Shown here: positions 1 through 37,500 of the stretch, piece by piece
Position numbering within the stretch: position 1 is the first letter of the stretch
Layout: each line of letters begins with the position of its first letter
The notes under the pieces: model-generated
What the model was told of the DNA's origin: nothing
Seen by the model: the letters and a program-made list of their open reading frames with translations, nothing else
The model's database searches: none
Translations under genes and position numbers: made by a program
NCBI RefSeq assembly: GCF_044704955.1
Contig: NC_091995.1
Coordinates: 63,798,001 to 63,862,000, forward strand
Reading direction: 5' to 3'
DNA: 64,000 bases
Source: Pristiophorus japonicus
Lineage: Eukaryota

Positions 1-42
1 GGTTGGCGATTGCTCTCGGTCTGTTGCTGGCTTTCTTCTCCC
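1..42 (+). CDS. IgH leader (signal peptide) exon, 5' truncated by the window edge
   Basis: From base 3 it reads LAIALGLLLAFFS plus 1 nt, followed by a GTCAGT donor at 43. The intron ends TTTTACAG at 168, and phase-1 splicing is in frame with the V exon. Confidence 0.85.
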
Positions 43-168: not shown

Positions 169-473
169 ATGTCGAGTCAGATGTGGTGTTGACTCGGCCC
201 GATGCAGAGACCAGTATTCCCGAAGGTTCCCTGAGGCTGACCTGTAAAACCAGCGGCTTCGATCTCAGTAGCAGCTCCATGGTCTGGGTCCGCCAGGTTC
301 CCGGACAGGGGCTGGAGTGGCTGGTTAGCTGTGCCGCAACATGGCTCAAGGTTTATGCCCCAGCGATTCAAAGTCAATTTAATGCGTCCAAAGCCACTTC
401 AAATAACATCTTTGCGTTGGACATGAAGAACCTAAGAAGCGAAGACACCACCATCTATTACTGTACAAGGGAC
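169..473 (+). CDS. IGHV: Immunoglobulin heavy-chain VH segment (shark IgM-type), open frame
   Basis: DVVLTRP...[12 protein letters not shown]...[13 protein letters not shown]...[17 protein letters not shown]; both canonical Cys and the FR2 Trp are present; followed directly by an RSS. Confidence 0.95.
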
Positions 474-512
474 CACAGCGAGAGGAACAAGTGCTGGACC
501 CGTACAAGAACA
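474..512 (+). other. V 3' recombination signal sequence, 23-bp spacer
   Basis: Heptamer CACAGCG (474-480), 23-nt spacer (481-503), nonamer ACAAGAACA (504-512). Confidence 0.9.
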
Positions 513-915
513 GATCGAAGGGGAATTCAACAACTTACAACATAACCTGACGGTCAGTAATTGTCTCAAATGCAACATTGACGGCAGTGTTCAGAACAAG
601 ACCACAAATCGCTTCTTACAAAACTAACACAGATAATTCAAGGTGAAAATCTAACACACTAACCCATGTATTGAGTGGAGGATTTGCTTGTGCTCCTGTT
701 TAATGTTAACAGTGTCAGCATTTGCAGAGCTGGACATGTTGCTCGATTCACTGTACTTGGTACCTTTAGGGAGCTGTTTAAAACTGTCTTAATGTTCTAT
801 TGTGTTGTGTAAACTGTTAGCAAATTGTAAACTTGATCAGAAATTAATGTCTATTTGAAGTCAATATCTATTTGAAGTGAATGTTGAGAGTTAGCACTGA
901 GCAGAGAGTGAATGC

Positions 916-943
916 AATATTTGTGTGGATGCTTATCATTGTG
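916..943 (-). other. RSS upstream of J with a 12-bp spacer (D-type 5' RSS)
   Basis: On + strand: nonamer-like AATATTTGT (916-924), 12-nt spacer GTGGATGCTTAT, heptamer CATTGTG (937-943) abutting the J coding sequence. Nothing nonamer-like lies at 22/23 spacing (GAGTGAATG). Confidence 0.7.
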
Positions 944-996
944 AGACTGCTATTACGACTACTGGGGACAAGGGACCATGGTGACGGTGACTGCAG
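944..996 (+). CDS. IGHJ: JH segment (probably a germline-fused D-J)
   Basis: DCYYDYWGQGTMVTVTA with the WGxG motif; GTAAGG donor at 997. Confidence 0.93.
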
Positions 997-3900
997 GTAA
1001 GGAACATTCACTCATTCAGTAACTGTTGCATTTTTGTCTTTATTTTATATTTCTGTTTATGTTAATAATTATTTCGTTCACTAATACTTGGTTTCGATGG
1101 ATTCTCTATGGAGACTTTTCAATATTCCACGTAATTCTGCTACAAAGTGATTATAAAATTTAACTGTTTCTCCACGGAAAATGTTGTTGATGTGATTTGC
1201 TGTTTATCTGCTGACGAGACTGTGTGCTTGGTATATTTTAAATAGCCAACGGTTGTTGCACTGTTCGACGTTTCCTCAATGTTTAATCTCGGTGACCTCT
1301 GATTGCTGCATTTTTTCTGATCGAATGGCAAACATTGCGCATAAATGTTTAGCAAGAACATTGTTGGCACAAAACAGAAAGCTTAGCGCTCAGTAAATAA
1401 TCTTTAGAAATTTACCGTCTTTTTGTGAAAATTACATTGTCATCGACTGACCGAATGTTCCCGAATGCTTAGATGCAATACGTGAAGTGTTACTGTAATT
1501 AAGAACTGAAAAATTAACACATTTCCAGATGGAACGGATTGAAATTAATATTACAAACATTATTATAATGTAGTCATATCACCCATTATTACTAAAATAT
1601 GCTATATTATCAATATTTATGTATTTAACATGATCCGTCTAATCACAATTCTGCTGTCATTATTTTATAATTCTGTTGAATTCAATCATTAGTTATTTCA
1701 GTGTTAGGCGGATTCGCTGATTCTGTAATGAGACATTTTCCAAAAATACATTTGATTCTGCTGAAAGTGTTTATAGAATGAAGGGTCTGCTCCATGAAAG
1801 ATTCTGTCTAGGGATTCCACCCCTCAATGATGTGATTTAGTGTTGGTCTCCTGAGGAGAGTTTGTGCCTGTGTTAGTCAGAATTCCTAGAATATGTGAAA
1901 CTGTTTGGCGTTTCTACAATGTTTAATATCGTTGACAGCGGGCAGCAGCAGGTTTGTGATCGCATGCACACACGATAGTGTTTGAAACTGTTTGAAAGAA
2001 GATTGTAGGCAAAGAACAGGAAAGTTTTAGAAATCAGACACCATTGAAAGGTATTTCAACATAACAATTATTGAAGTGATAATTATATATTCAACTATTA
2101 TTCTATGCTTAAGCTGCTGATATTTACTGTGTGAAATGTAACTGTAATTACCAGCTACATTATTAACAAGTGTTCATGTTGTAGTTCAAATAAATTACTA
2201 TTAACCAATTGATTATAATGCAATTATATCTCCCAATGTTATAAAACTATGCTATAATATCAATGTCCATTTACTTAATATTCACCTTCCAATATCCTGC
2301 TCTACAGTGGGCTCCATTAAAGGGAGCGGAAACTGTTGGAGGTTGGATACAGTTATTAATTATGCCTGCAATTATTCCACTGACAGCATACTGATTCCAC
2401 CGCTGTGTTCAGTTTGATTAGAGTCTTCAATTACTTGCTACCTCCTGTTTACACAGATGAATGACATAGTTCATTTAGTTATAACTTAAAGCCGTGTTGC
2501 AAATGGCATTTTCTCAATTTTATATCGCTGCTGGGGTATGAAATCCTTACTGTGCAGCGAAATGTGTTATTCCTTCAATATTATGTATTGTTTGGTAGCG
2601 AGAGAATTATCACTAAACTATTCTAAAACAGTTTGCAAGATCAAAGACTGAGAGACAGGCGTCGCTGGCAGTCAAATAATTGTTCATGTGATTATATTTA
2701 AATTCAAAGCATGTTCAGTCTGCAAATGGCTGGAGTCACACAAATAATCCATTGAAATTCAAGCAGTTTAATTTCCTTAGAAAAGGTTCATGTTATTTTC
2801 TATTTAAAACAACATTCTATCTCCAAAGCGCTGATGCATACGGGAGAGGACGGTAGACAAAGCCCAGATCACATCTGAGAGTTATGCTTAACTCTTATTA
2901 ATACTAAATTGATGAACAAAGTCTCTCCTCCATTTGCTCATTCAGCTTCAGTGCCGCAGATAGTCTCAATGAATTGTTATCTTCCAGTTTTACACTAACC
3001 ATTCTGGAAACTATTTTCAAGAAGTAGCAGAATATATGTAATAATTAATTTGTGGGCATTGTGTGAATAAAGGAAGTATTTGTGTTATTAAATAGCGGAG
3101 GCTCTGCTACTGACTGCAAACTGCACGAGTGGGTTTTAATAAATAAAACCTTTTTTGGTGTGTTAAGATTGAGGAGAATATTTCAGTTCGAGAGTCAGCT
3201 TTAGTAAACAAGCGGTTTACAGCCACTCGGAGTAGTGATCCCGCCCAGAAATTGAACTTTTTAAAATAGTCCTCTCCTCAATCCATCATGTGAAATGTAC
3301 GCTGAGAATAGATGGAGGTTATGCTATAGCAGAAACATGCAGAGTACAAAAAAGGTGTCGGTAGAGAGCGGGACAGTATTAGAACTGCGTGATTATTGTC
3401 AATTGTTCAAATGCAATTCGATTTAAGTAAAAATAATGTGTTTTCTGATTGTATTTATGTATTAATATGGTGTTTAATATTTTAATATTGATGACTTGTT
3501 ATGGTAAGTTAAGTAAACCTTAATATATCACAAGTTACCAGGCAGAAAAAGGTTTTAAAATTATTATTAATTAATTGTATTAGTAAGACTGAAATTCAAG
3601 TACATTAATTTAATTTCAAAATTCCATGTTCGTGTGCTTCGGAGGAGGGAGTGCCAACAGGCACTCAGTTTATTTTCAATAATCAACTAACATGAACATT
3701 AACTTAGAATGGAAAATCAGTTCTATTTCATTAGACATAAATTATCTCTTGCAATTGCGTTGCATACTGGTCAGTATTAGATATTGCACCATCTCAAGGG
3801 TTAGAGAGAATGTTAAATTAATTCCTAAATTAATTTAGAAAACAATGCATTTATAACTTGGCCGTGCTGAGTTCGATAAGATGTCGCTGCAGATGTTAAT

Positions 3901-7448: not shown

Positions 7449-7745
7449 TAACACCGTCTTCTCCCACCCTGTACACTCTGCTCCCCTGTGGACAACCCAG
7501 CACCGAAGGCTCGGTCACGTACGGCTGTTTGGTGATTGACTACTCCCACGAAATCACCAACTTTTCCTGGAGGAAAGATAAAGAGCTGATCACCACTGGA
7601 TTGAAGACCTACCCGTCAGTGCTCAACAAGAAGGGAACCTACACTTTGAGCAGCCAGCTTACCATCACGGAGTCAGAGGTGGGGATCAGCACAATCTACT
7701 TTGAGGTTCGACGTGGTGGGTCTGTCTGGGTCATCACTATGTCAG
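7449..7745 (+). pseudogene. IGHM: IgM CH1 exon with second domain Cys replaced by Phe
   Basis: TTTTCCAG acceptor; TPSSPTLY...YGCL...SW...[31 protein letters not shown]...IYFEVRRG (shark C-mu1). TTT at 7700-7702 sits where TGT is expected. GTTAGT donor at 7746. Confidence 0.92.
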
Positions 7746-7799: not shown

Positions 7800-9400
7800 A
7801 TTGTATAGAAACTTGGTTAAACCACACTTAGAGTAATGTGTACAGTCTGGTCTCCATATCACATTAGAGTACTGAATACAGTTCCGCCTCCATTTGACAC
7901 TTGGAATACTGTGCAGAGTTCTGGTTTCCATATCACACTTAGAGTACTGCACAGTTCTTGTCTCTATATCAAACTTAGAATACTGTGCAGCGTTCTGCCC
8001 TCTATATCACACTTAGAATACTGCACAGTTCTGCTCTCCATATCACATTTAGAATAGTGCACAGTTCGGGTTTCCATATTATACATAGAATAATCTGAAT
8101 ACTTAGAGTCCCCATATCACAATTAGAGTACTGAGTACAGTTCTGGTCTCCATATCACAATTAGAATACTGTGCACAGTTCTGGTTTCCATATCATACTT
8201 AGAATATTCTGAACAGTTCCGATCTCCATATCATACTGAGAATACTGTGCAAAGTTCGATTTCCATATCACACTTAGAATACTGAGTACAGTTCCGGTCT
8301 CCATATCATATTAGAATATTCTGTCCAGTTATGATCCCCATATCACACTAAGAGTACTGTGTACAGTTCTGGTCTCCATATCACATTTAGAGTAATGCAT
8401 ACAGTTCTGATCTCCATATCACACTGAGAGTACTGTGTACAGTTCAGGTCTCCATATCATACTTAGAATATTCTGCGCAGTTATGGTCCCCATAGCACAC
8501 TTGTAGAACTGCGTACAGTTCCGGTCTCCATATCACAATTAGAATGCTGTGCAAAGTTCTGGTTTCCATATCATACTTAGAATACTCTGCACAGCTCCGG
8601 TCTCCATATCACACTTAGAATATTCTGCGCAGTTATGGTCTCCATATCACACTTAGAGTACTGAGTAGAGTTCAGGTCTCCATATCATTTTAGAATATTC
8701 TGCGCAGTTATGGTCCCCATATCACACTTAGAGTACTGAATACAGTTCCGGTTTCCATATCATACTTAGAATACTCTTCACAGTTATGGTCCCCATATCA
8801 CACTTAGAGTACTGTGTATAGTTTTGATCTCCATCTCATATTTAGAATACCGTGTACAATTTTTGTCATCATATCACACTTAGAGTATTATGTACCGTTC
8901 TGGTCTCCAAATCACACTTAGAGTAATGTATACAGTTCTGATCTCCATATCACACTGAGAATACTGTGTACAGTTCTGCTCTCTATATCACACTTAGATT
9001 ACTGTGCACAGTTCTGGTCTCCTTATCATCCTTAGAATACTGTGCATCGTTCTGGTCCCTATATCACACTTAGAGTACTGAATACAGTTCCGTTCTCCAT
9101 ATGACACTTACAATACTGTGCACAGTTCTGGTTTCCATATCACATTTAGAATACCGCACATTTCTTGTCTCTATATCACACTTAGAATATTGTGTAAAGC
9201 TTGGTCTCCATATCACACTTAGAATACGGTGTACAATTCTAGTCTCCAGCACATACTTAGAATACGGTATACAGTTTTGGTCTCCATATCACACTTAGAA
9301 TACTGTGTAAAGTTCCGGTCCCTATATCACACTTAGTATATTATGCACAGTTCTGGTCTCCATATTAGATTTAGAATACTGTGCACAGTACTGCTCTCTT
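7800..9400 (+). repeat. 38-bp minisatellite (~40 copies) derived from a CR1 ORF2 segment
   Basis: Unit CTCCATATCACACTTAGAATACTGTGCACAGTTCTGGT. The array starts in LYRNLVKPHLE*CVQ.WSPY-like CR1 sequence and units translate as HLEYC... Confidence 0.9.
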
Positions 9401-9522: not shown

Positions 9523-9834
9523 AACCGGACATCGTTCCTCCAACTGTTCTCCTCACGCTGAGTTCCACTGAACAAATCACCAGCAGCAGATATGCAAGCG
9601 CCGTGTGTTCAATCACCGATTTTCGGCCAAAGTCACTGACCATGAATTGGTTGAATTGTGGACAATTTCTGGATTCGGGCTTCGTCACCTCGCCCGTATT
9701 TGAGGTGAACGGGAACTTCTCGGTGGTCGGTTGGCTGACAGTCCCTGCCGGGGACTGGTTCACCGGCTCGGTCTACACCTGCCAGGTCACTCATGAAGGG
9801 GTCACACAAAGCCATAGCTTCACCAGATCTCAGG
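9523..9834 (+). CDS. IGHM: IgM CH2 exon (frame intact)
   Basis: [39 protein letters not shown]...[20 protein letters not shown]; AG at 9521-9522, GTAAGA donor at 9835. Confidence 0.92.
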
Positions 9835-11747: not shown

Positions 11748-12135
11748 AAGATGGCGCATGTGGCGATTCAAAAATCACTCTTCGCCCACCGTCACTGGAA
11801 CAGGTCTTATTGGAGGCGACGGTGACCTTAACCTGCGTCGTGTCTGACGCTCCTTATGGACTCACCGTGTCCTGGACCCGAGAAAAGGAGGCTTTGAAAT
11901 CAGAGATTACCGTCCAACCCAGACAGAATCCCAACAGCGTGATCAGCAACTTAAACATCTCAACACAAGACTGGCTGAGTGGGGATAAGTTCTACTGCGT
12001 GGTGATCCATCAGGATATGCCGACTCCTATCAAACATCTCAACACAAGACTGGCTGAGTGGGGATAAGTTCTACTGCGTGGTGAGCCATCAGGATATGCC
12101 GACTCCTATCAGAGATTCCATCCACAAGAAAAAGG
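11748..12135 (+). pseudogene. IGHM: IgM CH3 exon frameshifted by a 79-bp tandem duplication
   Basis: [34 protein letters not shown]...[20 protein letters not shown]. 11953-12031 is repeated at 12032-12110, giving a stop at 12065-12067. The normal GTGAG donor is at 12136. Confidence 0.93.
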
Positions 12136-13036: not shown

Positions 13037-13424
13037 CGAAACATCCATGGGAACCGGCCGTGTCTGTCCTCCTACTCTCGGCAGAAGAAGTCTCCGCTCA
13101 GAGCTTGGTCAGCCTCACCTGCTTAGTGGGAGGTTTCTCTCACCGAGACATCTTCATCAAGTGGACCGTCAATGGCAAGCCGGTTGAATCCCACAACTAC
13201 AAGAACACCGAGGCGATGGCGGAGATCGGCAGCAGATCCTTCTTCATATACAGCCTGCTAGCCATTGCAGCCAAGGAGTGGGCCAGCGGCGCTTCCTACT
13301 CCTGTGTGGTCGGGCATGAAGCAATCCCCTTAAAGATCATCAACAGAACCGTCAATAAATCCAGCGGTAAACCAGTTTTGACAACATTTCGCTTGTTCTG
13401 ATAGACACCGTCAATTCATGTTAA
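13037..13424 (+). pseudogene. IGHM: IgM CH4 exon plus secretory tailpiece (tail frameshifted)
   Basis: [30 protein letters not shown]...WTVNG...[32 protein letters not shown]; internal membrane-form donor G|GTAAA at 13367. Restoring 1 nt after CCA (13374) gives [16 protein letters not shown]. Confidence 0.93.
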
Positions 13425-13829: not shown

Positions 13830-15360
13830 ATACCCTACTCCCCGCCACAGAGAGGTGAAAGAATAATTGTTAACCGACTTTAGTCCCACTCCCCCGCCAG
13901 AGAGAGATGAAAAGATAATTGTTAACCCAAGCTAGTTCTACTTCCCATCCAGCGAGAGCTGAAAGTGTAATTGGTAGTCCACTTTAGTCCCACTTCCCAT
14001 CCAGCGAGAGCTGAAAGTGTAATTTATAGTCCAATTTAGTTCCACTTCCCATCCAGCGAGAGCTGAAAGTGTAATTGGTAGTCCACTTTAGTCCCAATTC
14101 CCAACCAGAGAGAGGGGAAATGGTAATTGTTAACCAACTTTCGACCCAATCCCCCGCCAGAGAGAGATGAAAGTGTAATTGTTAACCGACTTTAGTCCCA
14201 CTCCCCCTAGAGAGAGGTGAAAGTGTAATTGTTAAGCGACTTTAAACCCACTCTTCCAGTAGAGAGAGTGGAAAGGGCAATTGCTAATGCAATTTAGAAG
14301 CACACCCCCCAGAGAGAGGTGAAAGCATAATTGTTAATCCAATTTAGTCCCACTTCCCATCCACAGAGAGGGGAAAGGGTAATTTTTAAGCGACTTTAAT
14401 CCCAATCTTCCAGTAGAGAGAGGTGAAAGGGTAATTGCTAAACGACTTTAGTCCCATTTCCCCGCCACAGAGAGGTGAAAGGGTAATTGTTAACCTACTT
14501 TATTGCCAACCCCTCCCCCCAAGAGAGAGGTGAAAGGGTAATAGTTAATCAAATATGGTCCCACTCCCCCCACCACAGAGAGGTGAAAGGGTAATAGTTT
14601 ACTAACATTAGTCCCACTCCCCCACCACACAGAGGGGAAAGGGTAATTGTTAACCTACTTTAGTCCCACTCCCCCCGAGAGAGGGGAAAGGGTAATTGTA
14701 AACATAATTTAGTCCCATTCCCCCCAGCAGAGAGAGATTAAAGGGTAATTATTAATTCTCTGTACCTACACAATCCCCAGCAGGGAGAGAGTAAAGGTTA
14801 AATATTAACTCACTGTAATTCCCCACTCCCTCAGCAGAGAGAGAGCAAATGTTAATTATTAATTCACTATGCCTCTCCACTCCCCCAGCAGAGAGAGAGG
14901 AAAGGGTAATTATTAACTCACTCTACCTCCCCACTCCCCCAGTAGGGAGAGAGTAAAGGTTAATTATTAACTCACTTTACCTCCCAACTCCCCCAGCAGG
15001 GTGAGATAAAGGTTAATTATTAACTCACTGTACACCCCCCCCCCACCACTTCCCCAGCAGAGAGAGTGTAAAGGGTAATAATTAACCCACTGTACCTCCC
15101 CATTCCCCCAGCAGGGAGAGTAAAGGATAATTATTAACTCACTGCACCTCCACACTCCCCCAGCTGTGAGTGAATAAAGGGTAATTATTAACTCACTGTA
15201 CCTCCCCACTCCCCCAGCTGGGAGTGAATAAAGGGTAATTATTAACTCACTGTACCTCCCCACTCCCCCAGCTGGGAGTGAATAAAGGGTAATTATTAAC
15301 TCACTGTACCTCCCCACTCCCCCAGCAGTGAGAGTGTAAAGGATAATTATAAACTCATTA
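13830..15360 (+). repeat. C-rich minisatellite, 52-bp units grading into 54-bp units
   Basis: CCACTCCCCC..AGAGAGAGGTGAAAGGGTAATTGTTAA units. The 18-aa repeat in ORF 14967-15317(-) gives the 54-bp period. Confidence 0.9.
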
Positions 15361-15759
15361 TACCTCTCTCACCCACCAGCGAGAGGGGAAAGGGCAATGT
15401 GTAAACAATGTAACCCCCACTTGCCCTCCCGCAGGTAGATTGGAAGTGAGCCACTCACTTGTATGGACTAAGTTGCCATCAGTACAATGTTAGATTCTAA
15501 ACAATGGACTGAAGATTTTTAACTTGCCACATGAGTATTATATTCTGAAATAACTAGTTATTCCATGTAATATTTTTAAATAGGGTTGGGGTGAAACTGC
15601 CACAGTTAACTGTAAACTAACATATTGAATTCTAATGGGCCATATCTAAACTGGTGATTGAATCCTCTGTGGGATTCTTACAGTTGTGTCACTGACGTTT
15701 CTGAGGCCCATGGGTTGAATTGTTGCATTCCTTCAGCTGATGTCACATTGCGCCTCACA

Positions 15760-16530
15760 AAGAACACATTTACACAGAGCAGGGAGAATAAATGTGAAAG
15801 TGATTTTGTGTGTGTTCACATGTAAGTGTATCGATGATTTTGTGTAAGTGTGTGTGTTTTTCTGTATGTGCACAATTACACATAAACACACATAGACTGA
15901 CAGAAAAAAAGACACATATTAACACTCTGACACATAATATTACACATAACCAGAATATAATGAAAACCATCATTGTCAAATCCAGTTATTGTTACACTCT
16001 GAAACTTTGAACAATTACAGTAATACACATCAATCCAAACACACACTTAAACAAAACACACTTACACACACAAAAACACAGACATTAATCCACACATAAA
16101 CTTACACAAAACACACTTACACACATTTACACACACATAAACACACACATAAACACACACATGAATATACATACACACAAGGATACACATACAATTACAC
16201 ATAAGCACACATATGAACACACTTGCACACGAACATTCACACACACACAAACATACACACACACACCAACACACAAACCCTTACACGTGAACATGCTTAC
16301 ACATAAACGTACAGGCACTCACCTGCACCAAATTGCACACTCACAATTACAGATAAACACACGTACTCTTACACAAAACACACACAAAGACTTACATACA
16401 CATACACAATCTCATAAATGCACACGCGCACAAACTGACACATCAATACACACATTTACACATAAACACACGCACACAGACAAAAACACACACACACTTA
16501 GATAAAACCACATATCAACACCCTGACAGG
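15760..16530 (+). repeat. Degenerate (CA)n/(TG)n low-complexity tract
   Basis: ACAC-rich sequence producing spurious His/Thr and Cys/Val ORFs. Confidence 0.9.
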
Positions 16531-17236: not shown

Positions 17237-17363
17237 ATTCCTCAGACCACATCTGGAATGAAGACGATGAGGGCGACAGTGGCAACATCTGGACAACCGC
17301 TTCCACATTCATCATCTGTTCTTGCTGAACATTTCCTCCAGCGCTGCCGTCACTCTGGTGAAG
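17237..17363 (+). pseudogene. IGHM: IgM TM1 exon with a 1-nt deletion
   Basis: DSSDHIWNEDDEGDSGNIWTTASTFII, then frameshift at ~17316; the other frame gives FLLNISSSAAVTLVK. 127 nt versus 128 nt in the paralog at 45080-45207. AG/GT boundaries intact. Confidence 0.92.
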
Positions 17364-17503
17364 GTGGGAAGATTCAAGCGGCTGACATGTCTATCTGACT
17401 GAAGCGGTTTGACCAATCTCTGGAAGTTTTATTGATTAAAACACTGAAATAAATGCCCCCGACCACTAAAACTCCGCTTCATTCTTTTATTCCTCTTTTA
17501 CAG

Positions 17504-17512
17504 CTCAAGTGA
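17504..17512 (+). CDS. IGHM: IgM TM2 exon coding part (LK*)
   Basis: Polypyrimidine tract + CAG|CTC AAG TGA; AATAAA at 17566 and 17614. Confidence 0.8.
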   Translation, partial: LK

Positions 17513-17859: not shown

Positions 17860-20800
17860 CATAAGAACATAAGACATAGGAGCAGGAGTAGACCTTATGG
17901 ACACTCGAGTCTGCTCGGCCATTCAATACGATCAGGGCTGATCATCATCCTCAACTCCACTTTCCCGCCTGATACACATATCCCTTGGTTCCCCTAGATT
18001 TCAAAAATCTGTCTATTTGAGCCTTAACTATATCCAGAGACTCAGCATCCACAGCCTTCTGGGGTGCAGAATTGCAAAGGTTCACAACTATTGTGTATGC
18101 ATGCCTGTTTACTGTGTGATGTATGTAACACAGTTATGCAACACTGAATGTACCCTTGCACTCTAGATGCTGGTTTAACTAATGTGACTAATGATATGAA
18201 TGCAGGTGTCAGTAAGGTTAAGAACAAGTTTATTATGCTTAACATTATTGATAGAGATTGTGAAATGCCGAAGGTAACCATGTCTGTTGAAACCAGGACA
18301 CCCAAAAGTGATGCAAATGCTAGAATGTATAATGCAGGCTCGACTATATATGATCAGAGCCAAGGTGTCATGTATACTGGTAGGACACTGCCAAAGGACA
18401 TTGGGTCCGACAGGGACCATGCCAATGGAATCCCCCTGTGAGAGACCTCCAGTTCCAGCAGGCTACCTAACCATGTAGCCTGGACCTTTGGAACGAATGT
18501 GATGCCCCTGGCAGGACACACACACAGGCAGTGGGAGGAGACCCACTACAGGGACAGTGGTCACTGGGCAGCCCAGCCACCACCAATGGCAACCTGCACC
18601 AGATCAGCCCTACAGCCCCTGGCCAACAGGTCGAACAACAGGAGCATGAGGACAATACCCTCCAGCTTCCCTGGCAAACCCTGGGATGCCTGGCCCTCAT
18701 CCCAGTTGGTGGACAAGGAGCCCACCCTGTCTTGTGGCCCTGCCCACCACCGCACAACTACACACATCACAGCGTATACAAACCACCCACTATAGCCGTG
18801 GCTACCTCCTCGAGGGATCCCACAACAGTGACACCCGCTTGGTTTGTGTGTGAGGGAGGGGAAACGTATGAGGCCAGCCTCAAGCACAGGCGTCACACCT
18901 GGCAACCACACAACCCTCACCACAGCCTCCCATAGCGCACCACTGACCACCTCCCCTCGTCATGACAATAAGGATATGAAAAATGCTCAGGGGGGAGTAT
19001 TGTTGTGTATGCATGCCTGTTTACTTTGTGATGTGTGTAACACTGTTATGCAACACTGAATGTACCCTTACACTGTACACACATTGCCTATACACCAGAG
19101 GGTGCTGCTGCTGGAGGCCTAAGGGTTGCCTGCACACGGCAGTTAACCCACTATGAAAGGGAACTCACAGCTTGTTGTCATCACTCAGGACCTGCAAATA
19201 AAGGACTACAGGTCAGCACAGTTTAATTATCATTCCCTGCCTCGTGGAGTCATTACTAAAGGTGCACACAAAAACTACAACTGGCGATGGGAATACGAGG
19301 TCACGAACTATATGCTCAACATGTCTAACCTCAGCAACTTTCAGCAATTTACAGAGGGGGGAAGATTGGGACGCTTTTGTGCATAGATTGGAACACTTCT
19401 TGATCGCCAACGACCTGGACGGGGCACACCGGCTACACTACCGAACAAACGCAGGGCCATCCTGCATAGCAATTGCATGCGCACCATCTACGGTCTCGTC
19501 AGGGACTTACTAGCCCCGGAGAAGACAACCACCAAGAGCTATGAGTAACTTGTAACAATCATACAGGAACAACTAAAACCGAAATAAAGCATCCTCACAG
19601 TCAGGCACCGTTCCACACTTACCAGCAACCTGAGGGCCTAGCAATTGCCAAGTACGCTTCACACTTAAAAAGACTAGCTGCACCATGTGATTTTGGCGAC
19701 CACCTTAATGAAGCACTAAGGGGCATATTTTTCATCGGAATCGACCACGAAGGCCTCCTACAGAAATTGCTCTCGGCTGACATCACGGTCACCCTGCAGA
19801 AAGCATTTCAAGTGAGCCAGGCCTACATGGTTTTGGCCAGCGACTCCAGGCGAATACTGACCCAGGACTGTAAACCGGCGAGTGCAGTGCATCACATGGA
19901 TACTTCTAAAGGCAGAAATGCTGCCCTGCGTCCCGCAACCCTGAGTCCGCCACATGGGGCAAACCGGATAGGCCCGTGCTGGCGCTGTGGAGGAAGCCAC
20001 AGGGCCCATCAGTGGCAGTACAAAGATTATGCATGCAAAGGCTGCAAAGGGAAAGTGCACCTTCAGAGAATGTGCAGAAAAGGCTGTACTCACCGCGTCT
20101 GTGATCAGTTGGCTGATCACCGAGGCTCTGACACAGACGAAGATGAAGCTGCTCAAACCCCTGGAAGAGTATGGAATCTTTACCTGCTCCACCAGAAGTT
20201 CTCGGTGGATGATGGAAGTGGACATTGATGGGGTCCCAGTCTCCATAGAGATCGACACAGGGACGAGCCAATCTGTGATGAGCCAAATGATCTTGGAAAA
20301 AATTTGGATGAATCCCTCCACTCGACCAAATCTGTCTCCTGTCTCGGCAAAGCTGCTCACCGACAGCAAAGGTAAAATCCAAATCGTTGGCAGTGTAGAC
20401 GTCCAGGTCTCTCAGGGCGGCATGTTGAAGAAACTCACCCTGTGGATCGTAGCCAGCGACGGTCCCACGCTGCTGGGCAGGAATTGGTTGAACCGGTTCA
20501 CATGAGGCGAAGTGGCCCTGTGGAAGAAAAGACCACCAGAGCCATCCTGCAGGAAAGCCAGGAAATGGCTGCAGCACCAGCAGCACAAGGAAAAACACTT
20601 ATAATCAAAATGGCCGCCGCCATGCCACCAGTGAGCATGGAGGAGCATCACATGACAGCGAGCGGCCAATCGGATTTGAAGGCTCCCTTAAAGGAGACCG
20701 GTATCCAAAGAAATGTAAAGGGGAAGTTTCAACGGTTTGAGTCCACGGACTTTAAAACTAAAGATGCGATTAAAGGGTGCAAGTATGAAAATGTATGCAA

Positions 20801-22125
20801 TGTAACAATGAATTGTGATGCTGGTTTAACTAATGTGACTAATGATATGAATGCAGATGTCAGTAAGTTTAAAAACAAGTTTATTATGCTTAACAGTGAT
20901 GACAGAGATTATGAAATGCCCAATGTAACCATGCCTGTTGAAACCAGGACACCCAAAAGTGATGCAAATGCTAGAATGTATAATGCAGGCTCAACTATGT
21001 GTGATCAGAGCCAAGGTATCATGTATACTGGTAGGAGACTGCGAAAGGACATTGGGTCATACAGGGACCATGCGGATGCCAATGGAATCCGCCTGTGGCA
21101 GACCCCCAGTTCCAGCAGGCTACCTAACCATGTAGCCTGGACCTTTGGAACGAATGTGATGCCCCTGGCAGGACACACACACAGGCAGTGGGAGCAGACC
21201 CACTACAGGGACAGTGGTCACTGGGCAGCCCAGCCACCACTAATGGCAACCTGCACCAGACCAGCCCTACAGCCCCTGGCCAACAGGTCGAACAACAGGA
21301 GCATGAGGCCATACACTCCAGCTTCCCTGGCAAACCCTGTAATGACCTGATCCTCATCCCAGTTGGTGGACAAGGAGCCCACCCAGTCTTGTGGCCCTGC
21401 CCACCACCGCACAACTACACACATCACATCGTATACGCACTATCCACTGCTGCCGTGGTTACCTCCCCGAGTGATCCCACAACAGTGACACCCACTTGGT
21501 TTGTGTGTGAGAGAGGGGAAAAGGACGAGGCCAGCCTCAAGCACAGGCGTCACACCTGGCAACCACACAACCCTCACCACAGCCTCCCATAGCCCATGAC
21601 TGATCACCTCCCATGGTCATGACAATAAGAATATGAAACATGCTCAGCAGGAGTAATGTTGTGTGTGCATTCCTGTTTATTGTGTGATGTCTGTAACACT
21701 GAATATACCCTTAACCTGTACACACCTTGCCTGTACAGCAGAGGGTGCTGCTGCTGGAGACCTAAGGGCTGCCTGCATACGGCAGGTAACCCAGTATAAA
21801 AGGGAACTCATAGCTTGTTGTCGTCACTCAGGAGCTGCAAATAAAGGACTACAGGTCTGCACAGTTTAAGTATCATACCCTGCCTCGTGGAGTCATTACT
21901 AAAGGTGCCTACATATACTACAACAACCCTCTGAATGCAGAAATTCCTCCTCACCTCTGTCTGAAATTGCCGATGCTTTATCCTGAGAGAGTACCCTCTG
22001 GTTCGAGATTCTCCAGCAAGGGAAAACAGACCTCCAGCATTTACCCTGTCAATCCCCCTAAGAATCTTATGATGCAGTCAGATCATCTCTCATTATTCTA
22101 AACTCCAGAGAGTACAGGCCTAATC
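17860..22125 (-). mobile_element. CR1 3' fragment split by an LTR element (17860-18088 and 21923-22125)
   Basis: (CATAAGAA)n tail at ~17860. The two sides rejoin as AAAGGTTCACAAC|CCTCTGAATGCAGAAATTCCTCCTCA, homologous to the CR1 at 34820-34865. Confidence 0.85.
18089..21922 (+). mobile_element. Tandem (three-LTR) non-autonomous Gypsy-type LTR element, gag + protease only
   Basis: ACAAC TSD (18084-18088 / 21923-21927). Partial LTR 18089-~18160, LTRs 19001-19279 and 21657-21922 (TG...CA). PBS-like TGGCGATGGG at 19282, disrupted gag with CWRCGGSH knuckle, protease IDTGT, no RT/RH/IN. Confidence 0.9.
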
Positions 22126-27106: not shown

Positions 27107-28776
27107 CTCAACAGCTCAACAAACCTGTGGGCATCCTCAGAGCTGCATGCATTACATTGCTTCCCCTTTTTTTTCGATGGAATGTATGGTACAATATTTC
27201 GGAAGATTACTTATCATGATTACAATATTACGAATTCGGCTGCTGAGCCTGAGTATCTTATTGCAAGATTTTAGCTTCCTCCTGTTCAGATTTCGAGTTA
27301 TGTGTCATTCTATGCCCATTTTCTACATTCTTATTTGACTCCGGAGACCGCCTTGGGGGAATTTGTGTTTTCAGGGCTTGTCGCCCAGGATTCCTGACCT
27401 CTACCTTCCTGTGTCTTTTTGAGTTTCCTTGGATCCCTTCCATCCATCCTCGTGTTCACTTTCTTCCGAATACCTTGATATTCACATATATCAATATCCT
27501 GTCTAGTTGGTTTTCCTTTCCTCATTGCTCTTCTCAACTGAGCACCAATTCCACATCCGCCTGCAGAAGATACAGGGCCTCTGAGAGATTATCCCACACC
27601 CGTAGAACCGCCTTCAGTCTGCTGCGTCTGAATTTGTAACCATTGTGTCTGTTAAAATGCTTGGACCTGTCAACCTGCTCTGATCATCGTCCAAGTCAGG
27701 TTCACAATTATCTCGTCGTGGTATCGAAGGTGCAGCACTCGCTAGCAACATTTGACCGACAAAACTGTTATATTCAGCAATTTTCACCAAGTACAGTTTG
27801 GTACCGCATACCCAAATAATTATACAATTGTCCCAATTGCGTGGACTTGGCCTTTTGGACAGAATGAAAACTCTGACCTAATCACCCTGCTGAAAGCATC
27901 ACTCTTTAGTACCGGAATGATAATGATGTTTCTGAATTGATTGTGCCTTCTCTACCTTATCAGACAAGTTTGGTTGCAATAAAGTGAGACACGTCCTCAG
28001 CCTACGCTTCATCAATAATTCAACAGATGTGTACCCTGTTACAGAATGAGTCATAGCCCTCTATTTGAAAAGAACATTCGCTAACCTGCGCGTCATGCTC
28101 ACCGATGCTCTAGTCTGTAGAACTTGTTTTTGCAAAGCCTCCTTTAACAATCCTGACTCGCCTTTTAGCTGCACCTTTCGAACCAGGATGATATGGTCCT
28201 ACTAATGTGTGTTCAATACCGTTGTGTCTGGCAAAACTCGTAAATTGCATGGACTGAAAATGAGGCCCATTATCTGACACCATTACTTCACGCAGCACAT
28301 GGCATGCAAAAATATCCCGTAATTCATCCAATGTAGGCTCTGAAGTCGTGGATGACCCCATATGATGTACCTCCAGCCACTTCGAATGGATATAGATTTG
28401 AATCGGAAAATTATCGCTGCCCCTCTCACAAAAATCAATATGTATTATTTGGAATAGTCTCATTGTCCAAGTCCATGTTTGCAGCAGCGTTTTAGCTGGC
28501 ATGGTCCTGCAGTATTGACAGAGTACACTTACTTACTAATAAATCTCAGTCTTTATCCAACCCAGGCCAATAAACAAACTTCAAGCCACCGCTTTTATGC
28601 TTATCATGAGCCAGTATGCTCATCGTGGAGTTCTGTCAAAATTTTGGCCCGTAGTGCACTGGGAATGACTACTCTCAGGCCCCATTTTAGACATCATTGC
28701 TCACATGACAATTTGTACCGATGATGATAAAAGGGCTTTAACCCCTCATCTACATGCGTCTGGTCATCATACCACC

Positions 28777-31293
28777 TGTAGTGTAAGTAGGCACCTTTAG
28801 TAATGACTCCACGAGGCAGGGTATGATACCTAAACTGTGTAGAACTGTGGTCATTTATTTCCAGTTCCTGAGTGAGGACAGAAAGCTGTGAGTTCCTTTT
28901 TATACTGGGTTATCTGCACTGTGCAGGTAATTCGTAGGTCTCCAGCAGCAGCACCCTTTGGTGTACAGGTAAGGTGTGTACATTAAAAGCGTGCATTCTG
29001 TGGCATAACAGTGTTACAGACATCACACAGTAAACAGGAGTGTATACACAATAATACGCCCCGCTAACCATTTTTCATATCCTTATTGTCATGATCAGGG
29101 GAGGTGATCTGTGGTGGGCTATGGTCGGTTGTGGTGAGAGTTGTGTGGTTGCCAGGTAGGACCACTGTGCTTGAGGCTGGCCTCGTCCGTTTGCCCTCCC
29201 TCAAACACAGACCACCTGGGTGTCACTCTTGTGGGAGCACGCAGTGGGAGGCGGCGGGGCGTAGCTATGGCAGCAGTGCTAGTGGGTATACACTGTGATG
29301 TGGGTAGTTGTGGGATGATGGGCAGGGCCACAAGACTGGGTGGGCTCCTTGTCCAACAATTGGGATGAGGGTCAGGTCATCCCGGTGTTTGCCAGGGAAG
29401 CTGAGGATATTGGGCTCATGCTCCTAGTGTTGGCCATGGTAGACAGGGGTTGTAGGGCAGGTCTGTGCAGGTTGTCATTGCTGTTGGCTGGGCTACCCAT
29501 TGACCACTGTCCCTGTAGTGGCTCTGCTCCCACTGACTGTGTGTGTGTCCTGCAAGGGGCATCACATTCGTTCCAAAGGTCCAGCCTACACGGGCAGGTA
29601 GCCTGCTTGACCTGAGGATCTCCCACAGGGAGATTCCATTGGCATCAGCATGGTCTCTGTAGGACCCAATGTCCTTTGGCAGTATCCTACCGGTATGCAT
29701 GACACCTTGGCTCTGATCACACATTGTCGATCCTGCATTGTACATTCTAGCATTTGCATCACTTTTTGGGTGTCCTGCTTTCAATAGACATAGTTACATT
29801 AGGCATTTCACATTCTCTATCATTATTATTAAGCATAATAAACTTGTTCTTAACCTTACTGACACCTGCATTCATCTCATTGGTCACATTAGTTAAACCA
29901 GCGTCACAATTCATGGTTACATGCATACATTTTCTTTCTTGCACCCTTTAATTGCATCTTTAGTTTTAAAGTCCGTCTACTGAAATAGTTGAAACTTCAC
30001 CTTTAAATGTTTTTGGTTACCGGTCTCCTTTAAGGAAGCCTTCAAATCTGATTGGTCGCTCGGTGTCACGTGATGCTCCTCCATGATCAGTCGTGATATG
30101 GCCGCGGCCATTTTGATTACAAGTTTTTCTCCTCGTGGTGCTGGTTTTGCAGCCATTTCCTGGCTTTCCTGCAGGTGTTCTGTGCTGGTCTTTTCTTCCA
30201 CAGCGCCACTTTGCCTGATGTGGATTGGTTCATCCAGTTCCTGCCCAGCAGTGTGCGATCATCGCCGGTTACAATCCACCGGGTGAGTTTGTTCAACACG
30301 CCACCGTGGGAGACCTGGATGTCTACGCTGCCAAGGATTTGGATTTTACCTTTGATATAGGTGAGCAGCTTCGACTGGACAGGAGACAGTTTTGGTCGAT
30401 TGGCAGGATTTATCCAAATTTTTTCAATGGTCATTTTGCTCATCGCAGAGTGGCTCACCCCTGTGTCGCTCTGCCTAGAAGCTGGGACCCCGGAGACGTT
30501 TACTTTAATCGCCCACGGAGAAATTTCGGTGGAGCAGTTATGAGTTCCATACTCTTCTTCCAGGGGTTAAGCAACTTCACCTTCCTCTGTGTCAGAGCCC
30601 CGGTGATCAGCCAACTCTTCAGAGATGCAGTGAGTAAAGCTTTTTCTGTACTTCCTTTGAAGGTGCCTTTTCTCTTTGCAAGCATAGTCTTTGTAGCGGC
30701 ACTGGTGGGACCTGTTATTTCCTCCCCAGCGCCAGCACGGAGCTAGCATGTTTGCCGCATGTGGCGGACTCAGGGTTGTGAGTGTTTCTGCCCTTAGATG
30801 TCTCAATGCGGTGCACTGCTCTCGTCGGTTTAGAGTCCCTTAATGCTTGATTTAGGTGGTCGCCAACGTCGCACGGTGCAGCCAGTTACCTTGAGTGTTC
30901 CAATCTTTCTATAAAAGCATCCCAATCTTCCCCATCCATAAATTGCTGAAAGATGCTGAGATTCGACATGCTGAGCTTGTGGTTCGTGACGTCATATCCC
31001 ATCCTCGTCGCCAGTTGCAGTGTATGGAGGCACCTTTAGTAATGACTCCACGAGGCAGGGTTTGATGCTTAAACTGTGTAGACCGGTAGTCCTTTACTTG
31101 CAGGTAATGAGTGAGGACAACAAGCTGTGAATTATTTTTATACTGGGTTCCCTGCAGTGTGCAGGTAACCCTTAGGTCTCCAGCAGCAGCACCCTTTGGT
31201 GTACAGATAAGGTGCGTACAGTATAATGGTACACTCAGTTTGGCATAACAGTGTTACAGACATCACACAGTAAACAGGCATGCATACACAAAA
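28777..31293 (-). mobile_element. Second copy of the gag-protease-only LTR family, nested in Gypsy pol
   Basis: LTRs 28777-29053 and 31016-31293; CCACC TSD (28772-28776 / 31294-31298); PBS ATCCCATCCTCGTCGCCA (30996-31013). The host frame rejoins as YEHTLQGW|YDD. Confidence 0.92.
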
Positions 31294-34594: not shown

Positions 34595-37500
34595 ACATAG
34601 AAACATAGAAACATAGAAAATACGTGCAGGAGTAGGCCATTCTGCCCTTCGAACCTGCACCACCATTCAATATGATCATGACTGATCATGAAACTTCAGT
34701 ACCCCATTGCTGCTTTCTCTCCATGTCCCTTGATCCCTTTAGCCTTAAGAACCACATCTAACTCCCTCTTGAATATATCTACCGAACTGGCCTCAACAAT
34801 TTTATGTGGTAGAGTATTCCGCAGGTTCACAATTCTCAGAGTGAAGAAGTTTCTCCTCATCTCGGTCCTAAATGGCTTACACTTTATCCTGAGACTGTGA
34901 CCGCTGGTTCTGGATTTAACCCACATCGGGATGATTCTTCCTGCATCTAACCTCTCCAATCCTGACAGAATTTAACATGTTTCTATGAGATCGCCTCTCA
35001 TTCTTCGTATTTCCAGTGAATATAAGCCCAGTCGATCAAGTCTTTCTTAATACATCAGTCCTGCCATGCCAGGAATCAGTTTGGTGAACCTTCGCTGCAC
35101 TCCCTCAATAGCAAGAATGTCCTTCCTCAGATTAGGAGACCAAAACTGCATACAATACTCAAGGTATGACCTCAAGCAGGCCCTGTACAACAGCAGTAAG
35201 ACCTCCATGCTGCTATACTCAAATCTTCTCGCTATGAAGGCCAACATGCCATTTGCCGTCTTCACCACCTGCTGTACATGCATGCCAACTTTCAATGACT
35301 GATGTACTATGACACCCAGGTCTAGTTGCACTTCCCCTTTTCCTAATCTGCCGCCATTCAGAGAATATTCTGCCTTCCTGTTTGTGCAACCAAAATGGAT
35401 AACCTCACTTTTACCTACATTAGTCTGCATCTGCAATGCATTTGCCCACTCACCTAATCTGTCCAAGTCACCCTGTAGCCTCTTAGCATCCTCCTCACAG
35501 CTCACACTGCCACCCAGCTTATTATCATCTGCAAACCTGGAGATATTAGATTCAATTCCTTCGTCTAAATTATTGATGTATATTGTACAGAGCTGGGGTC
35601 CCAGCACTGAGCCCTGCGGCACTCCACTAGTCACTGCCTGCCATTCTGAAAAGGACCAGTTTATCCCGACTCTCTGCTTCCTGTCTGCCAACCAGATCTC
35701 TAGCCACATCAATACATTACCCCCAATACAATGTGCTTTGATTTTGCACACCAATATCTTGTGTGGGACCGTGTCAAAAGCCTTTTGAAAGTCCAAATAC
35801 ACCATATCCTGTGGTTCTCCCTTATCCACTCTACTAATTACATCCTCAAAAATTCCAGAAGATTGGACAAGCATGATTTCCCCTTCATAACTCCATGCTC
35901 ACTTGGACCGATCCTGTCACTGCTTTCCAAATGCGCTGCTATTTCATCCTTAAAAATTGATTCCGACATTTTCCCCACTACTGATGTCAGGCTAACCGGT
36001 TTATAATTACCGGCTTTCTCTCTCCCTCCCTTTTTAAATGTGGTGTTACATTAGCTACCCTCCAGTCCATAGGAACAGATCCAGAGTCGATAGACTTTTG
36101 GAAGTTGATCACCAATGCATCCATTATTTCTAGGGCCACTTCCTTGAGTACTCTGGGATGCAGACTATCAGGCCCCGGGGATTTAGCGACCTTCAATCCC
36201 ATCAATTTTCCTAACACAATTTCCCGCCTAATAAGGATATCCTTCAGTTCGTCCTTCTCACTGGACCCTCGGTCCCCTAGTATTTCCGGAAGGTTATTTG
36301 TGTCTTCCTTCGTGAAGACAGAACCAAATTATTTGTTCAATTGGTCTTCCTTTTCTTTGTTCCCCATTATATATTCACCTGAATCTGACTGCAAGAGACC
36401 TACGTTTGTCTTCAATAATCTTTTTCTCTTCATACATCTATAGAAGCTTTTGCAGTCAGTTTTTATGTTCCCGGCAAGCTACCTCTCGTACTCTATTTTC
36501 ACCCTCTTAATTAAAGCCTTTGTCCTTCTCTGCTGAATTTTAAATTGCTCCCAGTCCTCAGGTTTGTTGCTTTTTCTAGCCAATTTATATGCCACTTCCT
36601 TCGATTTAACACTATCATTAATTTCCCGTGTTAGCCACGGTTGAGTCACCTTCGCCGTTTTAATTTTACTCCAGACAGGGATGTACAATTACTGAAGTTC
36701 ATCCATGTAATCTTTAAATGTTTGCCATTGCCTATCCACCGTCAACCCTTTAAATATAATTTGCCAGTGTATTCCAGCCAATTCATGCTTCAAACCATCG
36801 AAGTTACCTTTCCTTAAGTTCAAGACCCTAGTTTTTGAATTAACTGTGTCACTCTCCATCTTAGTAAAGAATTCTACAATGTTATGGTCACTCTTCACCA
36901 AGGGGCCTCACACAACAAGATTGCTAATTAGTCCTTTCTCATTACACAACACCCAGTCTAGGATGGCCAGCTCCCTAGTTGGTTCCTCGCCATATTGGTC
37001 TAGAAAACCATCCCTAATACACTCCAGGAAATCCTCCTCCACCGTATTGCTACCAGTTTGGTTAGCCCAGTCAATATGTAAATTAAAGTCACCCATGATA
37101 ACTGCTGTACCTTTATTGCATGCATCCATAATTTCTTGTTCGATGCTGTCCCCAAACTTACTATTACTGTTTGGCGGCCTGTAATCAACTCCCACGAGCG
37201 TTTTCTGCCCCTTAGTATTCTGTTGCTCCACCCATACCGATTCCACATCATCCAAGCAAATGCCCTTTCTAACTATTGCATTAATTTCCTCTTTAACCAG
37301 CAATTCCACCGCGCCTCCTTTTCCTTTCTGTCTATTCTTCCACAATGCTGAATACCCCTGGGTGTTGTGTTCATTGCCTTGTTCACCCTGGAGCAACGTC
37401 TCCGTGATGCCAGCTACTTCATACCCATTAACTGCTATCTGCGCATTTAATCCATCCACCTTATTCCGAATACTCCTCGCATTGAGGAACAGCGCTTTCA

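What the first reader, a model, noticed from the sequence alone, without database searches (positions are those of the whole stretch)
474..996. D-less IgH cluster: V with 23-RSS faces a J with a 12-RSS (apparent germline-joined V-DJ)
Seen: the V 23-RSS ends at 512. I find no flanked D segment in 513-915. Next comes AATATTTGT-12 nt-CATTGTG directly on the J coding sequence, with no nonamer at 22/23 spacing. Established: unrearranged shark IgM clusters are V-D1-D2-J with a 22/23-RSS on J, 12-RSS on the D 5' sides and a few hundred bp between segments; germline-joined clusters occur in cartilaginous fish. Inference: a D 5' 12-RSS has been retained while D and J were fused in the germline (coding joint or hybrid joint). 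The first bases AGACTG may be the D remnant. This leaves a light-chain-like, one-step V-to-(D)J substrate that obeys the 12/23 rule and would give a short CDR3 with a single variable junction. The configuration is the reverse of the VD-J/VDJ pre-joined forms I recall being described.
Basis: partly seen in the sequence, partly recalled or inferred. Interest (0 to 1): 0.85.

Follow-up and report, generated by a model that had tools for sequence, protein, structure and literature searches.

The report
D-less shark IgM cluster, dead copy
This shark antibody (IgM) heavy-chain gene cluster has lost all of its D segments in inherited DNA, so its V and J could join in one step as in a light chain. The constant-region gene of this copy is broken in four places, so it is a dead example of a modest new variant of a known shark habit.

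Summary
The V exon (169-473) is followed by a 23-spaced signal (474-512). The J (944-996) is directly preceded by a 12-spaced signal (916-943). No nonamer lies at 21-24 spacing from the J heptamer. Nothing in 513-915 looks more like a flanked D than random intervals of the window do.

Independent contigs from the sample's reads tile 1-988 exactly, at single-copy depth. The layout is therefore inherited, not a lymphocyte rearrangement.

Other notes of this scan report that many IgM clusters of this genome are V-23/12-D-22/12-J and span about 920 nt. On that reading the 12-signal on J is the local norm. What is special here is that the last D unit, about 400 nt, is gone.

I could not separate loss by a germline D-to-J join from loss by a plain deletion. 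The J is only 3-5 nt longer than two sibling Js, and its first bases resemble a D core only weakly.

This copy is a pseudogene as assembled: a Cmu1 Cys-to-Phe change, a 79-bp duplication in Cmu3, and frameshifts in the secretory tail and in TM1.

The scan noted a second D-less cluster (524 nt) on another piece, and read this same stretch once more in an overlapping window.

The parts
1..42 (+). 3' part of the leader exon. The start codon lies before the window.
   Evidence: Open frame ending at a GTCAGT donor at 43. Leaders of shark VH homologues align upstream of the V exon.
169..473 (+). VH exon. It is open, with conserved Cys22, WVRQ and YYC. It carries an extra Cys in CDR2, and the conserved RFTASKD motif reads QFNASKA.
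   Evidence: Pfam V-set, E = 3.5e-08. It is 51-68% identical to VH of Chiloscyllium, Heterodontus and Mustelus.
474..512 (+). V 23-signal: CACAGCG, 23-nt spacer, ACAAGAACA
   Evidence: Its translation aligns with the read-through of the same signal in a Chiloscyllium VH ORF.
513..915 (.). V-J interval of 403 nt with no recognisable D or signal pair
   Evidence: D scan at chance level. Sibling contigs align well on 513-750 and poorly on 751-850 (table 2).
916..943 (+). J-side 12-signal: AATATTTGT, 12-nt spacer, CATTGTG
   Evidence: Top 1 of about 92,000 control positions. No nonamer at 21-24 spacing.
944..996 (+). JH coding segment of 53 nt, possibly with a few D-derived bases at its 5' end. 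It has an in-frame Cys codon at 948-950.
   Evidence: Translation DCYYDYWGQGTMVTVTA and the GT donor at 997. It is 3-5 nt longer than two sibling Js.
7449..7745 (+). Cmu1 exon. The second canonical Cys is replaced by Phe.
   Evidence: Pfam C1-set. The window's IYFEV aligns to IDCEV of a Mustelus heavy chain.
9523..9834 (+). Cmu2 exon, apparently intact
   Evidence: Pfam C1-set, E = 8e-14. Splice sites read.
11748..12135 (+). Cmu3 exon. A 79-bp tandem duplication (11953-12031 and 12032-12110, 78/79 identical) shifts the frame and gives a stop at 12065-12067.
   Evidence: Pfam C1-set.
13037..13424 (+). Cmu4 exon with secretory tail. The tail lies in another frame than the domain, which implies a 1-nt loss near 13369.
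   Evidence: Three-frame translation; Pfam C1-set, E = 4e-20.
17238..17365 (+). TM1 exon with an internal 1-nt frameshift and a stop. A short TM2 follows at about 17503-17511.
   Evidence: The N-terminal half and the membrane-spanning half lie in different frames.

Best explanation
This is a real, inherited shark IgM minilocus with no D segment: V with a 23-signal, a 403-nt spacer, then a 12-signal directly on J.

It most likely descends from the one-D cluster type reported as common in this genome (V-23/12-D-22/12-J). One unit of about 400 nt, made of an interval, the D and its signals, has been lost. The route I think most likely is a RAG-type D-to-J join in the germ line. Germline joins of that kind are already held to have produced the joined V-J light-chain genes of sharks, and the partly or fully joined heavy-chain clusters (VD-J, VD-DJ, VDJ) are read the same way. 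Such a join would leave the D's 5' 12-signal on a DJ with very few D bases.

The two remaining signals are 12/23-compatible and point the right way for deletion. V could therefore join J in one step by excising 470 bp, giving a CDR3 of about 10 residues with a single junction.

Shown: the layout, its presence at single-copy depth, the absence of a D, and the broken constant gene. Inferred: the descent from a one-D cluster, the RAG route, and the ability to recombine. Because Cmu1, Cmu3, the secretory tail and TM1 are all damaged, this copy cannot make a normal heavy chain and is a pseudogene.
For: - Layout and statistics.
- Exact contigs tile 1-988 at depth 9-12, like the flanks.
- The span from V signal to J end is 523 nt. 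The one-D clusters noted elsewhere in this genome span about 920 nt. Exactly one unit of about 400 nt is missing, as a signal-to-signal excision would give. The 403-nt interval fits the roughly 400-bp spacing of shark gene segments (PMC2435157).
- Two germline-joined VDJ paralogues appear in the same reads at single-copy depth: joints 464-to-963 and 469-to-956. Germline joining has therefore acted in this gene family.
- The J is 3-5 nt longer than two sibling Js. Its first bases match 6 of 8 to the GCTGG-type core in those VDJ paralogues.
- The spacer of this J signal matches only 4 of 11-12 positions in the flanks of the two sibling Js seen. That fits a signal of different origin.
- V-DDJ is a documented somatic intermediate in nurse shark (PMC2435157).
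- Constant-gene lesions.
Against: - No sibling sequence could be aligned. It is not shown that 513-943 is collinear with a V-D interval plus a D 5' signal.
- A multi-copy sibling contig aligns across 822-1082 (record 23). This fits better with the upstream flank belonging to J itself.
- The extra J bases are few, and their likeness to a D is within reach of chance.
- Paralogue depth drops at about 750-850, which could mark a deletion breakpoint.
- The claim that the one-D layout is common rests on unchecked notes of this scan.
- The two 1-nt frameshifts lie in short C runs and could be assembly errors.
Confidence: 0.5

Rival explanations
1. The D was lost by an ordinary deletion or by unequal crossing-over between the V-D and D-J intervals. 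The 12-signal is then the J's own, as in the one-D siblings. No D bases are present, and RAG was not involved in this last step.
For: - A sibling contig at multi-copy depth aligns continuously over 822-1082, across the signal and J (record 23).
- Paralogue depth is high on 513-750, lowest on 751-850 and intermediate on 851-950. This is what a hybrid interval would show (table 2).
- The J is close to full length with little extra.
- The remaining interval has the length of one interval.
Against: - The record 23 alignment is only about 80% alike (42 other letters and 12 gaps over 261 nt). Most of the likeness may lie in J and the intron.
- Two other sibling Js have unrelated upstream flanks.
- A deletion that happens to leave both signals intact and one clean interval length is less expected than a signal-guided excision.
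Confidence: 0.3
2. A degenerate D with decayed signals is still present in the interval. The best candidate is 715-748, flanked by AACAGTG and CACTGTA. The cluster would then be a decayed one-D pseudogene.
For: This candidate is the best-scoring D-like structure. Its coding part holds an AGCTGG motif, and it lies where paralogue depth falls.
Against: Its score of 22 is matched by 27% of random intervals. No nonamers lie at proper spacing. The V-to-J span is about 400 nt shorter than in the one-D clusters, so a unit is missing and has not merely decayed.
Confidence: 0.05
3. An assembly artefact: a collapse at a short shared sequence near 691-717 joined the V side of one interval to the J side of another.
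For: The two exact contigs that carry the layout overlap by only 27 nt, at 691-717. This is a branch point in the read graph.
Against: All four exact contigs have equal single-copy depth. Contig breaks of the same kind occur at 297-313 and 988-999. A second cluster with an almost identical span (524 nt) was noted on another piece. Long reads would span the whole 1-kb region.
Confidence: 0.05
4. A somatic V-DJ intermediate from lymphocytes in the sequenced tissue was captured by the assembly.
For: V-DDJ intermediates are frequent in shark thymocytes and occur in B cells (PMC2435157). The tissue of the sample is not known to me.
Against: The depth of the contigs that carry the layout equals that of the flanking unique contigs, and no alternative unrearranged form of this V was seen. 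One clone cannot reach that share. The dead constant gene and the diverged V fit an old inherited copy. A second such cluster exists.
Confidence: 0.03

Closest known systems
Germline-joined IgM heavy-chain clusters of cartilaginous fish (VD-J, VD-DJ, VDJ), attributed to RAG action in germ cells (PMC5192425, PMC3308330, PMC2193156)
   Same: It has the same gene family and the same minilocus architecture. Gene segments are missing from inherited DNA while the flanking signals stay clean. Joined VDJ paralogues are present in the same genome.
   Different: The forms described in those reviews all start from the V side or are complete. Here the V is still free with its 23-signal, and it is the D side that has gone. 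No recognisable D sequence remains, so a join is inferred and not shown.
Somatic V-DDJ ('2R') intermediates of nurse shark IgH miniloci (PMC2435157)
   Same: It has the same topology: a free V with its signal, one interval of about 400 bp, then a 12/23-compatible signal on a joined D-J unit.
   Different: Those intermediates arise in individual lymphocytes and carry both Ds with junctional bases. This layout is in the assembled genome at single-copy depth and shows at most a few D-like bases.
One-D clusters V-23/12-D-22/12-J of this same genome (notes s1-876492, s1-877203, s1-877846, s1-878245, s1-878450)
   Same: They also carry a 12-signal on J and a 23-signal on V. They are the presumed parent type.
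   Different: They keep one D and span about 920 nt. This cluster has none and spans 523 nt. I could not read their sequences.
Shark light-chain V-J-C clusters
   Same: They have two segments and two signals, need one joining step, and sit about 0.4-0.5 kb apart. An NS5 light-chain locus in nurse shark gives an 880-bp germline and a 490-bp joined PCR product (PMC2435157).
   Different: The segments here are VH and JH in front of four Cmu exons. This is a heavy-chain cluster that only works like a light-chain one.

Membership tests
Cartilaginous-fish IgM heavy-chain minilocus | VH exon with a 23-spaced signal at its 3' end | tested here: met
   Pfam V-set; homology to shark VH; signal at 474-512.
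Cartilaginous-fish IgM heavy-chain minilocus | JH with the WGQG motif and a splice donor, about 6-7 kb upstream of Cmu1 | tested here: met
   J at 944-996 with a donor at 997. Cmu1 starts at 7449, an intron of 6.45 kb against 6.3-6.8 kb in nurse shark (PMC2435157).
Cartilaginous-fish IgM heavy-chain minilocus | Four C1-set Cmu exons, a secretory tail and TM exons | tested here: met
   All are present. Four of them carry disabling changes.
Cartilaginous-fish IgM heavy-chain minilocus | Two D segments, each flanked by signals, between V and J | tested here: not met
   No D above chance in 513-915. The interval has the length of a single spacing.
Cartilaginous-fish IgM heavy-chain minilocus | 22/23-spaced signal on J. 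This is the canonical layout as I recall it from Kokubu et al. 1988; the paper is not held in the library. | tested here: not met
   12-spaced signal at 916-943 and no nonamer at 21-24 spacing.
Germline-joined shark Ig gene (RAG-mediated join in germ cells) | Present in germline or non-lymphoid DNA | tested here: inconclusive
   Single-copy depth in the assembly's own sample. The tissue is unknown, and no second individual was tested.
Germline-joined shark Ig gene (RAG-mediated join in germ cells) | Coding sequence of both partners recognisable on either side of the joint | tested here: inconclusive
   The J is 3-5 nt longer than two sibling Js, with a 6-of-8 likeness to a D-type core. This is too short to decide.
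Germline-joined shark Ig gene (RAG-mediated join in germ cells) | Flanks collinear with a split sibling, so that the joint can be reconstructed as in Lee et al. 2000 (PMC2193156) | not testable with these tools
The window holds only one cluster.
Light-chain-type V-J cluster | VL and JL segments followed by a single C exon | tested here: not met
   VH-type V, JH-type J and four Cmu exons.

The most novel reading that the evidence does not exclude
D-less clusters of this kind form a small living subfamily in this shark; a second one with an in-frame DJ was noted on another piece. They would make IgM heavy chains by a single V-to-J join. CDR3 would be largely germline-encoded, and a germline Cys in CDR2 would pair with a germline Cys at the start of J to form an inter-loop disulfide. 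The copy in this window would be a dead member of that subfamily.
Probability: 0.12. Interest if true: 0.7.

Novelty: new variant of a known kind. Interest (0 to 1): 0.4.

Why it matters
Sharks are the one vertebrate group in which antibody gene segments are known to have been recombined in the germ line. The reviews I could read list forms joined from the V side or joined completely.

A cluster in which the D side has gone while V stays free would extend that list. It would show a heavy-chain locus reduced to light-chain logic, with two segments, one 12/23 pair and one junction. Together with the one-D clusters of this genome, it suggests a stepwise series from two Ds to one to none.

For function the weight is small. 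This copy is a pseudogene, and nothing here shows that the type is used.

Tried and rejected
- **Sibling DNA.** No sibling cluster could be aligned.
- **Protein search.** The first homologous-protein run timed out. The second gave only three distant VH hits at 59-66% identity, none from this species.
- **Siblings inside the window.** BLAST of 1-1500 and of all Ig exons against the window found no second cluster.
- **Earlier findings by sequence.** The search on 513-943 came back blank.
- **Canonical signal spacers.** Kokubu 1988, Lee 2008 and Roux 1998 are not held. The papers I could read do not state the shark IgM spacers. The canonical 23-signal on J therefore rests on my recollection.
- **A signal joint left in the interval.** I inspected by eye for back-to-back heptamers, which D excision by its own two signals would leave. 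The best, at 749, matches 9 of 14 and has no nonamers.
- **A hybrid-joint signal swap.** This would keep the D, so it does not explain a D-less cluster.
- **Expression.** The species' other small runs hold next to none of the words of 1-1400. One run shows only a rearranged transcript-like contig of another cluster. That is no evidence either way.

Full report
**What is in the window.** The first 17.5 kb of the + strand hold one shark-type IgM heavy-chain minilocus, and it is the only one in the window.
- The end of the leader exon runs to 42. The V exon is 169-473 (Pfam V-set). It is 51-68% identical to VH of Chiloscyllium, Heterodontus and Mustelus.
- The V signal is CACAGCG, 23 nt, ACAAGAACA at 474-512.
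- A 403-nt interval follows (513-915).
- The J-side signal is AATATTTGT, 12 nt, CATTGTG at 916-943. J coding is 944-996, with a GT donor at 997.
- The constant exons are Cmu1 7449-7745, Cmu2 9523-9834, Cmu3 11748-12135, and Cmu4 with tail 13037-13424. All four are C1-set. TM1 is 17238-17365, followed by a short TM2.
- The J-to-Cmu1 intron of 6.45 kb and the roughly 400-bp segment spacing match what is described for nurse shark miniloci (PMC2435157).

**Check of the observation.**
- On a simple consensus score the J 12-signal reaches 13.5. Only one of about 92,000 control positions of the window reaches 13 or more, and the J signal sits exactly on the J coding end.
- At 21-24 spacing the best nonamer matches 3 of 9.
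- I scanned 513-915 for a D: a 5' 12-signal, 4-40 nt of coding, then a 3' signal with 11-13 or 22-24 spacing. The best candidate (715-748) scores 22. Control intervals of 403 nt average 20.96 (sd 1.42), and 27% score as high. There is no D above chance.

**Is it germline and real?** I laid Logan contigs from three runs of one sample on 1-1500. That sample may be the one the assembly was built from.
- Exact pieces cover 1-313, 297-717, 691-988 and 999-1207 at depth 9-12 in X1. The depth is equal across pieces.
- A somatic intermediate of one clone could not reach the depth of unique flanking DNA, so the layout is inherited.
- The weak spot is the 27-nt overlap at 691-717, where a collapse could in principle have joined two intervals. 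Breaks of the same kind occur at 297-313 and 988-999. A second cluster with a 524-nt span was noted elsewhere in the genome. I give the artefact 5%.

**What the siblings show.** The same call gives glimpses of paralogues.
- Two contigs at single-copy depth join V directly to J, with 33 and 15 other letters between (joints 464-to-963 and 469-to-956). These are germline-joined VDJ genes, so germline joining has acted in this family. Notes s1-877712 and s1-878997 report such genes independently.
- Two sibling Js have the canonical heptamer CACTGTG and 14 and 16 nt of coding before TGG (loose ends at 957 and 959). The J here has 19.
- In one of them the three bases at the place where a 12-spaced nonamer would end do not fit a nonamer. 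J signals of another spacing therefore probably also exist in this genome.
- One contig at multi-copy depth aligns across 822-1082, through the signal and J, at about 80% likeness (record 23).
- Paralogue depth is high on 513-750, lowest on 751-850 and intermediate on 851-950.

**What other notes of the scan add (unchecked leads).**
- Five notes describe clusters of this genome as V-23/12-D-22/12-J spanning about 920 nt, and call the type common.
- One note describes a D-D-J cluster.
- One describes another D-less cluster of 524 nt.
- The same stretch was also read in an overlapping window.

If these notes are right, the 12-signal on J is the local norm. The novelty of this cluster is then that the last D unit is missing: 523 nt against about 920 nt, which is one unit of about 400 nt.

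**How the D was lost.** Two routes fit the data.
- *(a) A RAG-type D-to-J join in germ cells.* It would use the D's 22-signal and the J's 12-signal. It removes exactly one interval and both inner signals, and leaves the D's 5' 12-signal on a DJ.
  - In favour: the clean loss of one unit; both outer signals intact; germline-joined paralogues in the same genome; a J that is 3-5 nt longer than its siblings; first bases that match 6 of 8 to the GCTGG-type core in the two VDJ paralogues; and a signal spacer unlike the flanks of the two sibling Js.
- *(b) A deletion or unequal crossing-over between the two intervals that keeps the J's own signal.*
  - In favour: record 23 bridges the signal and J; paralogue depth dips at 751-850; and the extra J bases are few.
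- Without sibling sequence I cannot decide. I put (a) at about 0.5 and (b) at about 0.3.
- Two other routes do not fit. A hybrid-joint signal swap would keep the D. Excision of the D by its own two signals would leave a signal joint, and I saw none.

**How it would work.** The two signals are 12/23-compatible and lie in deletional orientation. One cut-and-join would excise 470 bp and fuse V to J.
- From Cys (462-464) to Trp (963-965) the untrimmed product has about 10 residues. CDR3 would therefore be of ordinary length but with a single junction.
- A blunt join is out of frame, so trimming or added bases would be needed in the usual way.
- Both heptamers keep CAC. The nonamers match the consensus at 7 of 9 and 6 of 9.
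- All of this is inference. No recombination product was seen.

**This copy is dead as assembled.**
- In Cmu1 the second canonical Cys is Phe: the window's IYFEV aligns to IDCEV of a Mustelus chain.
- Cmu3 carries a 79-bp tandem duplication (78/79 identical) that shifts the frame into a stop at 12065.
- The secretory tail, [16 protein letters not shown], lies in a different frame from the Cmu4 domain.
- TM1 is split between two frames.
- The V is open, but the conserved RFTASKD reads QFNASKA.
- The two 1-nt losses lie in short C runs and could be assembly errors. The duplication and the Cys change are not of that kind.

**Comparison with what is known.** The reviews list VD-J, VD-DJ and VDJ as germline heavy-chain forms (PMC5192425, PMC3308330). 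RAG action in germ cells is the accepted origin (PMC2193156). V-DDJ is known as a somatic intermediate (PMC2435157).
- A free V facing a signal-bearing J or DJ in the germline is not among the forms named in the papers I could read. I could not read the primary horned-shark, nurse-shark or ratfish locus papers.
- I file it as a new variant of a known kind, and as a pseudogene copy of it. Interest is 0.4.

**Limits.**
- One protein search timed out.
- The species is coded, and I did not try to uncover it.

Noticed in passing
window 11953-12110: A 79-bp tandem duplication (78/79 identical) inside the Cmu3 exon shifts the frame and creates a stop at 12065-12067.
   Followed up: yes
window 327-350 and 948-950: The germline V has an extra Cys in CDR2 (VSCAATW), and J has an in-frame Cys codon in its 5' part (DCYYDY). 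A germline-encoded CDR2-CDR3 cysteine pair would recall the inter-loop disulfides of IgNAR and camelid VHH. Sibling CDR2s read YYYSPSSKYY instead.
   Followed up: partly
window 464-963 and 469-956 (joints): Contigs at single-copy depth join a related V directly to J, with 33 and 15 letters between. These are two germline-joined VDJ paralogues elsewhere in this genome.
   Followed up: partly
window 7823-9398: A 38-bp tandem array of about 42 copies (75% matches) fills most of the Cmu1-Cmu2 intron.
   Followed up: no
window 13840-15406 and 47616-47899; 16025-16500 and 46174-47450: The 52-54-bp array and the CA-rich tract downstream of Cmu4 recur in reverse complement at about 46-48 kb. This suggests the 3' flank of a second IgM cluster lying in the opposite orientation. 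No Ig exon of that cluster lies in the window.
   Followed up: no
window 47898-57790: A satellite of about 10 kb with a 23-bp unit (GCCGAGCTGACCGATCACACAGT and variants) and higher-order periods of 46, 62, 69 and 154 bp. The unit contains a heptamer-like CACAGTG and AGCT motifs.
   Followed up: no
window 18000-21600, 28100-30750, 35047-38600: Repeated retroelement pieces. There are gag/protease-like ORFs in two near-copies (18.1-18.9 kb and 20.4-21.6 kb, again at 29.3-30.7 kb), an integrase-like ORF at 28110-28502, and reverse-transcriptase and endonuclease-like LINE ORFs at 35-38.6 kb on the minus strand.
   Followed up: no
window 1035-1384 and 1655-2027: The two stretches of the J-Cmu1 intron are 66% alike over 378 nt. 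This looks like an old internal duplication.
   Followed up: no
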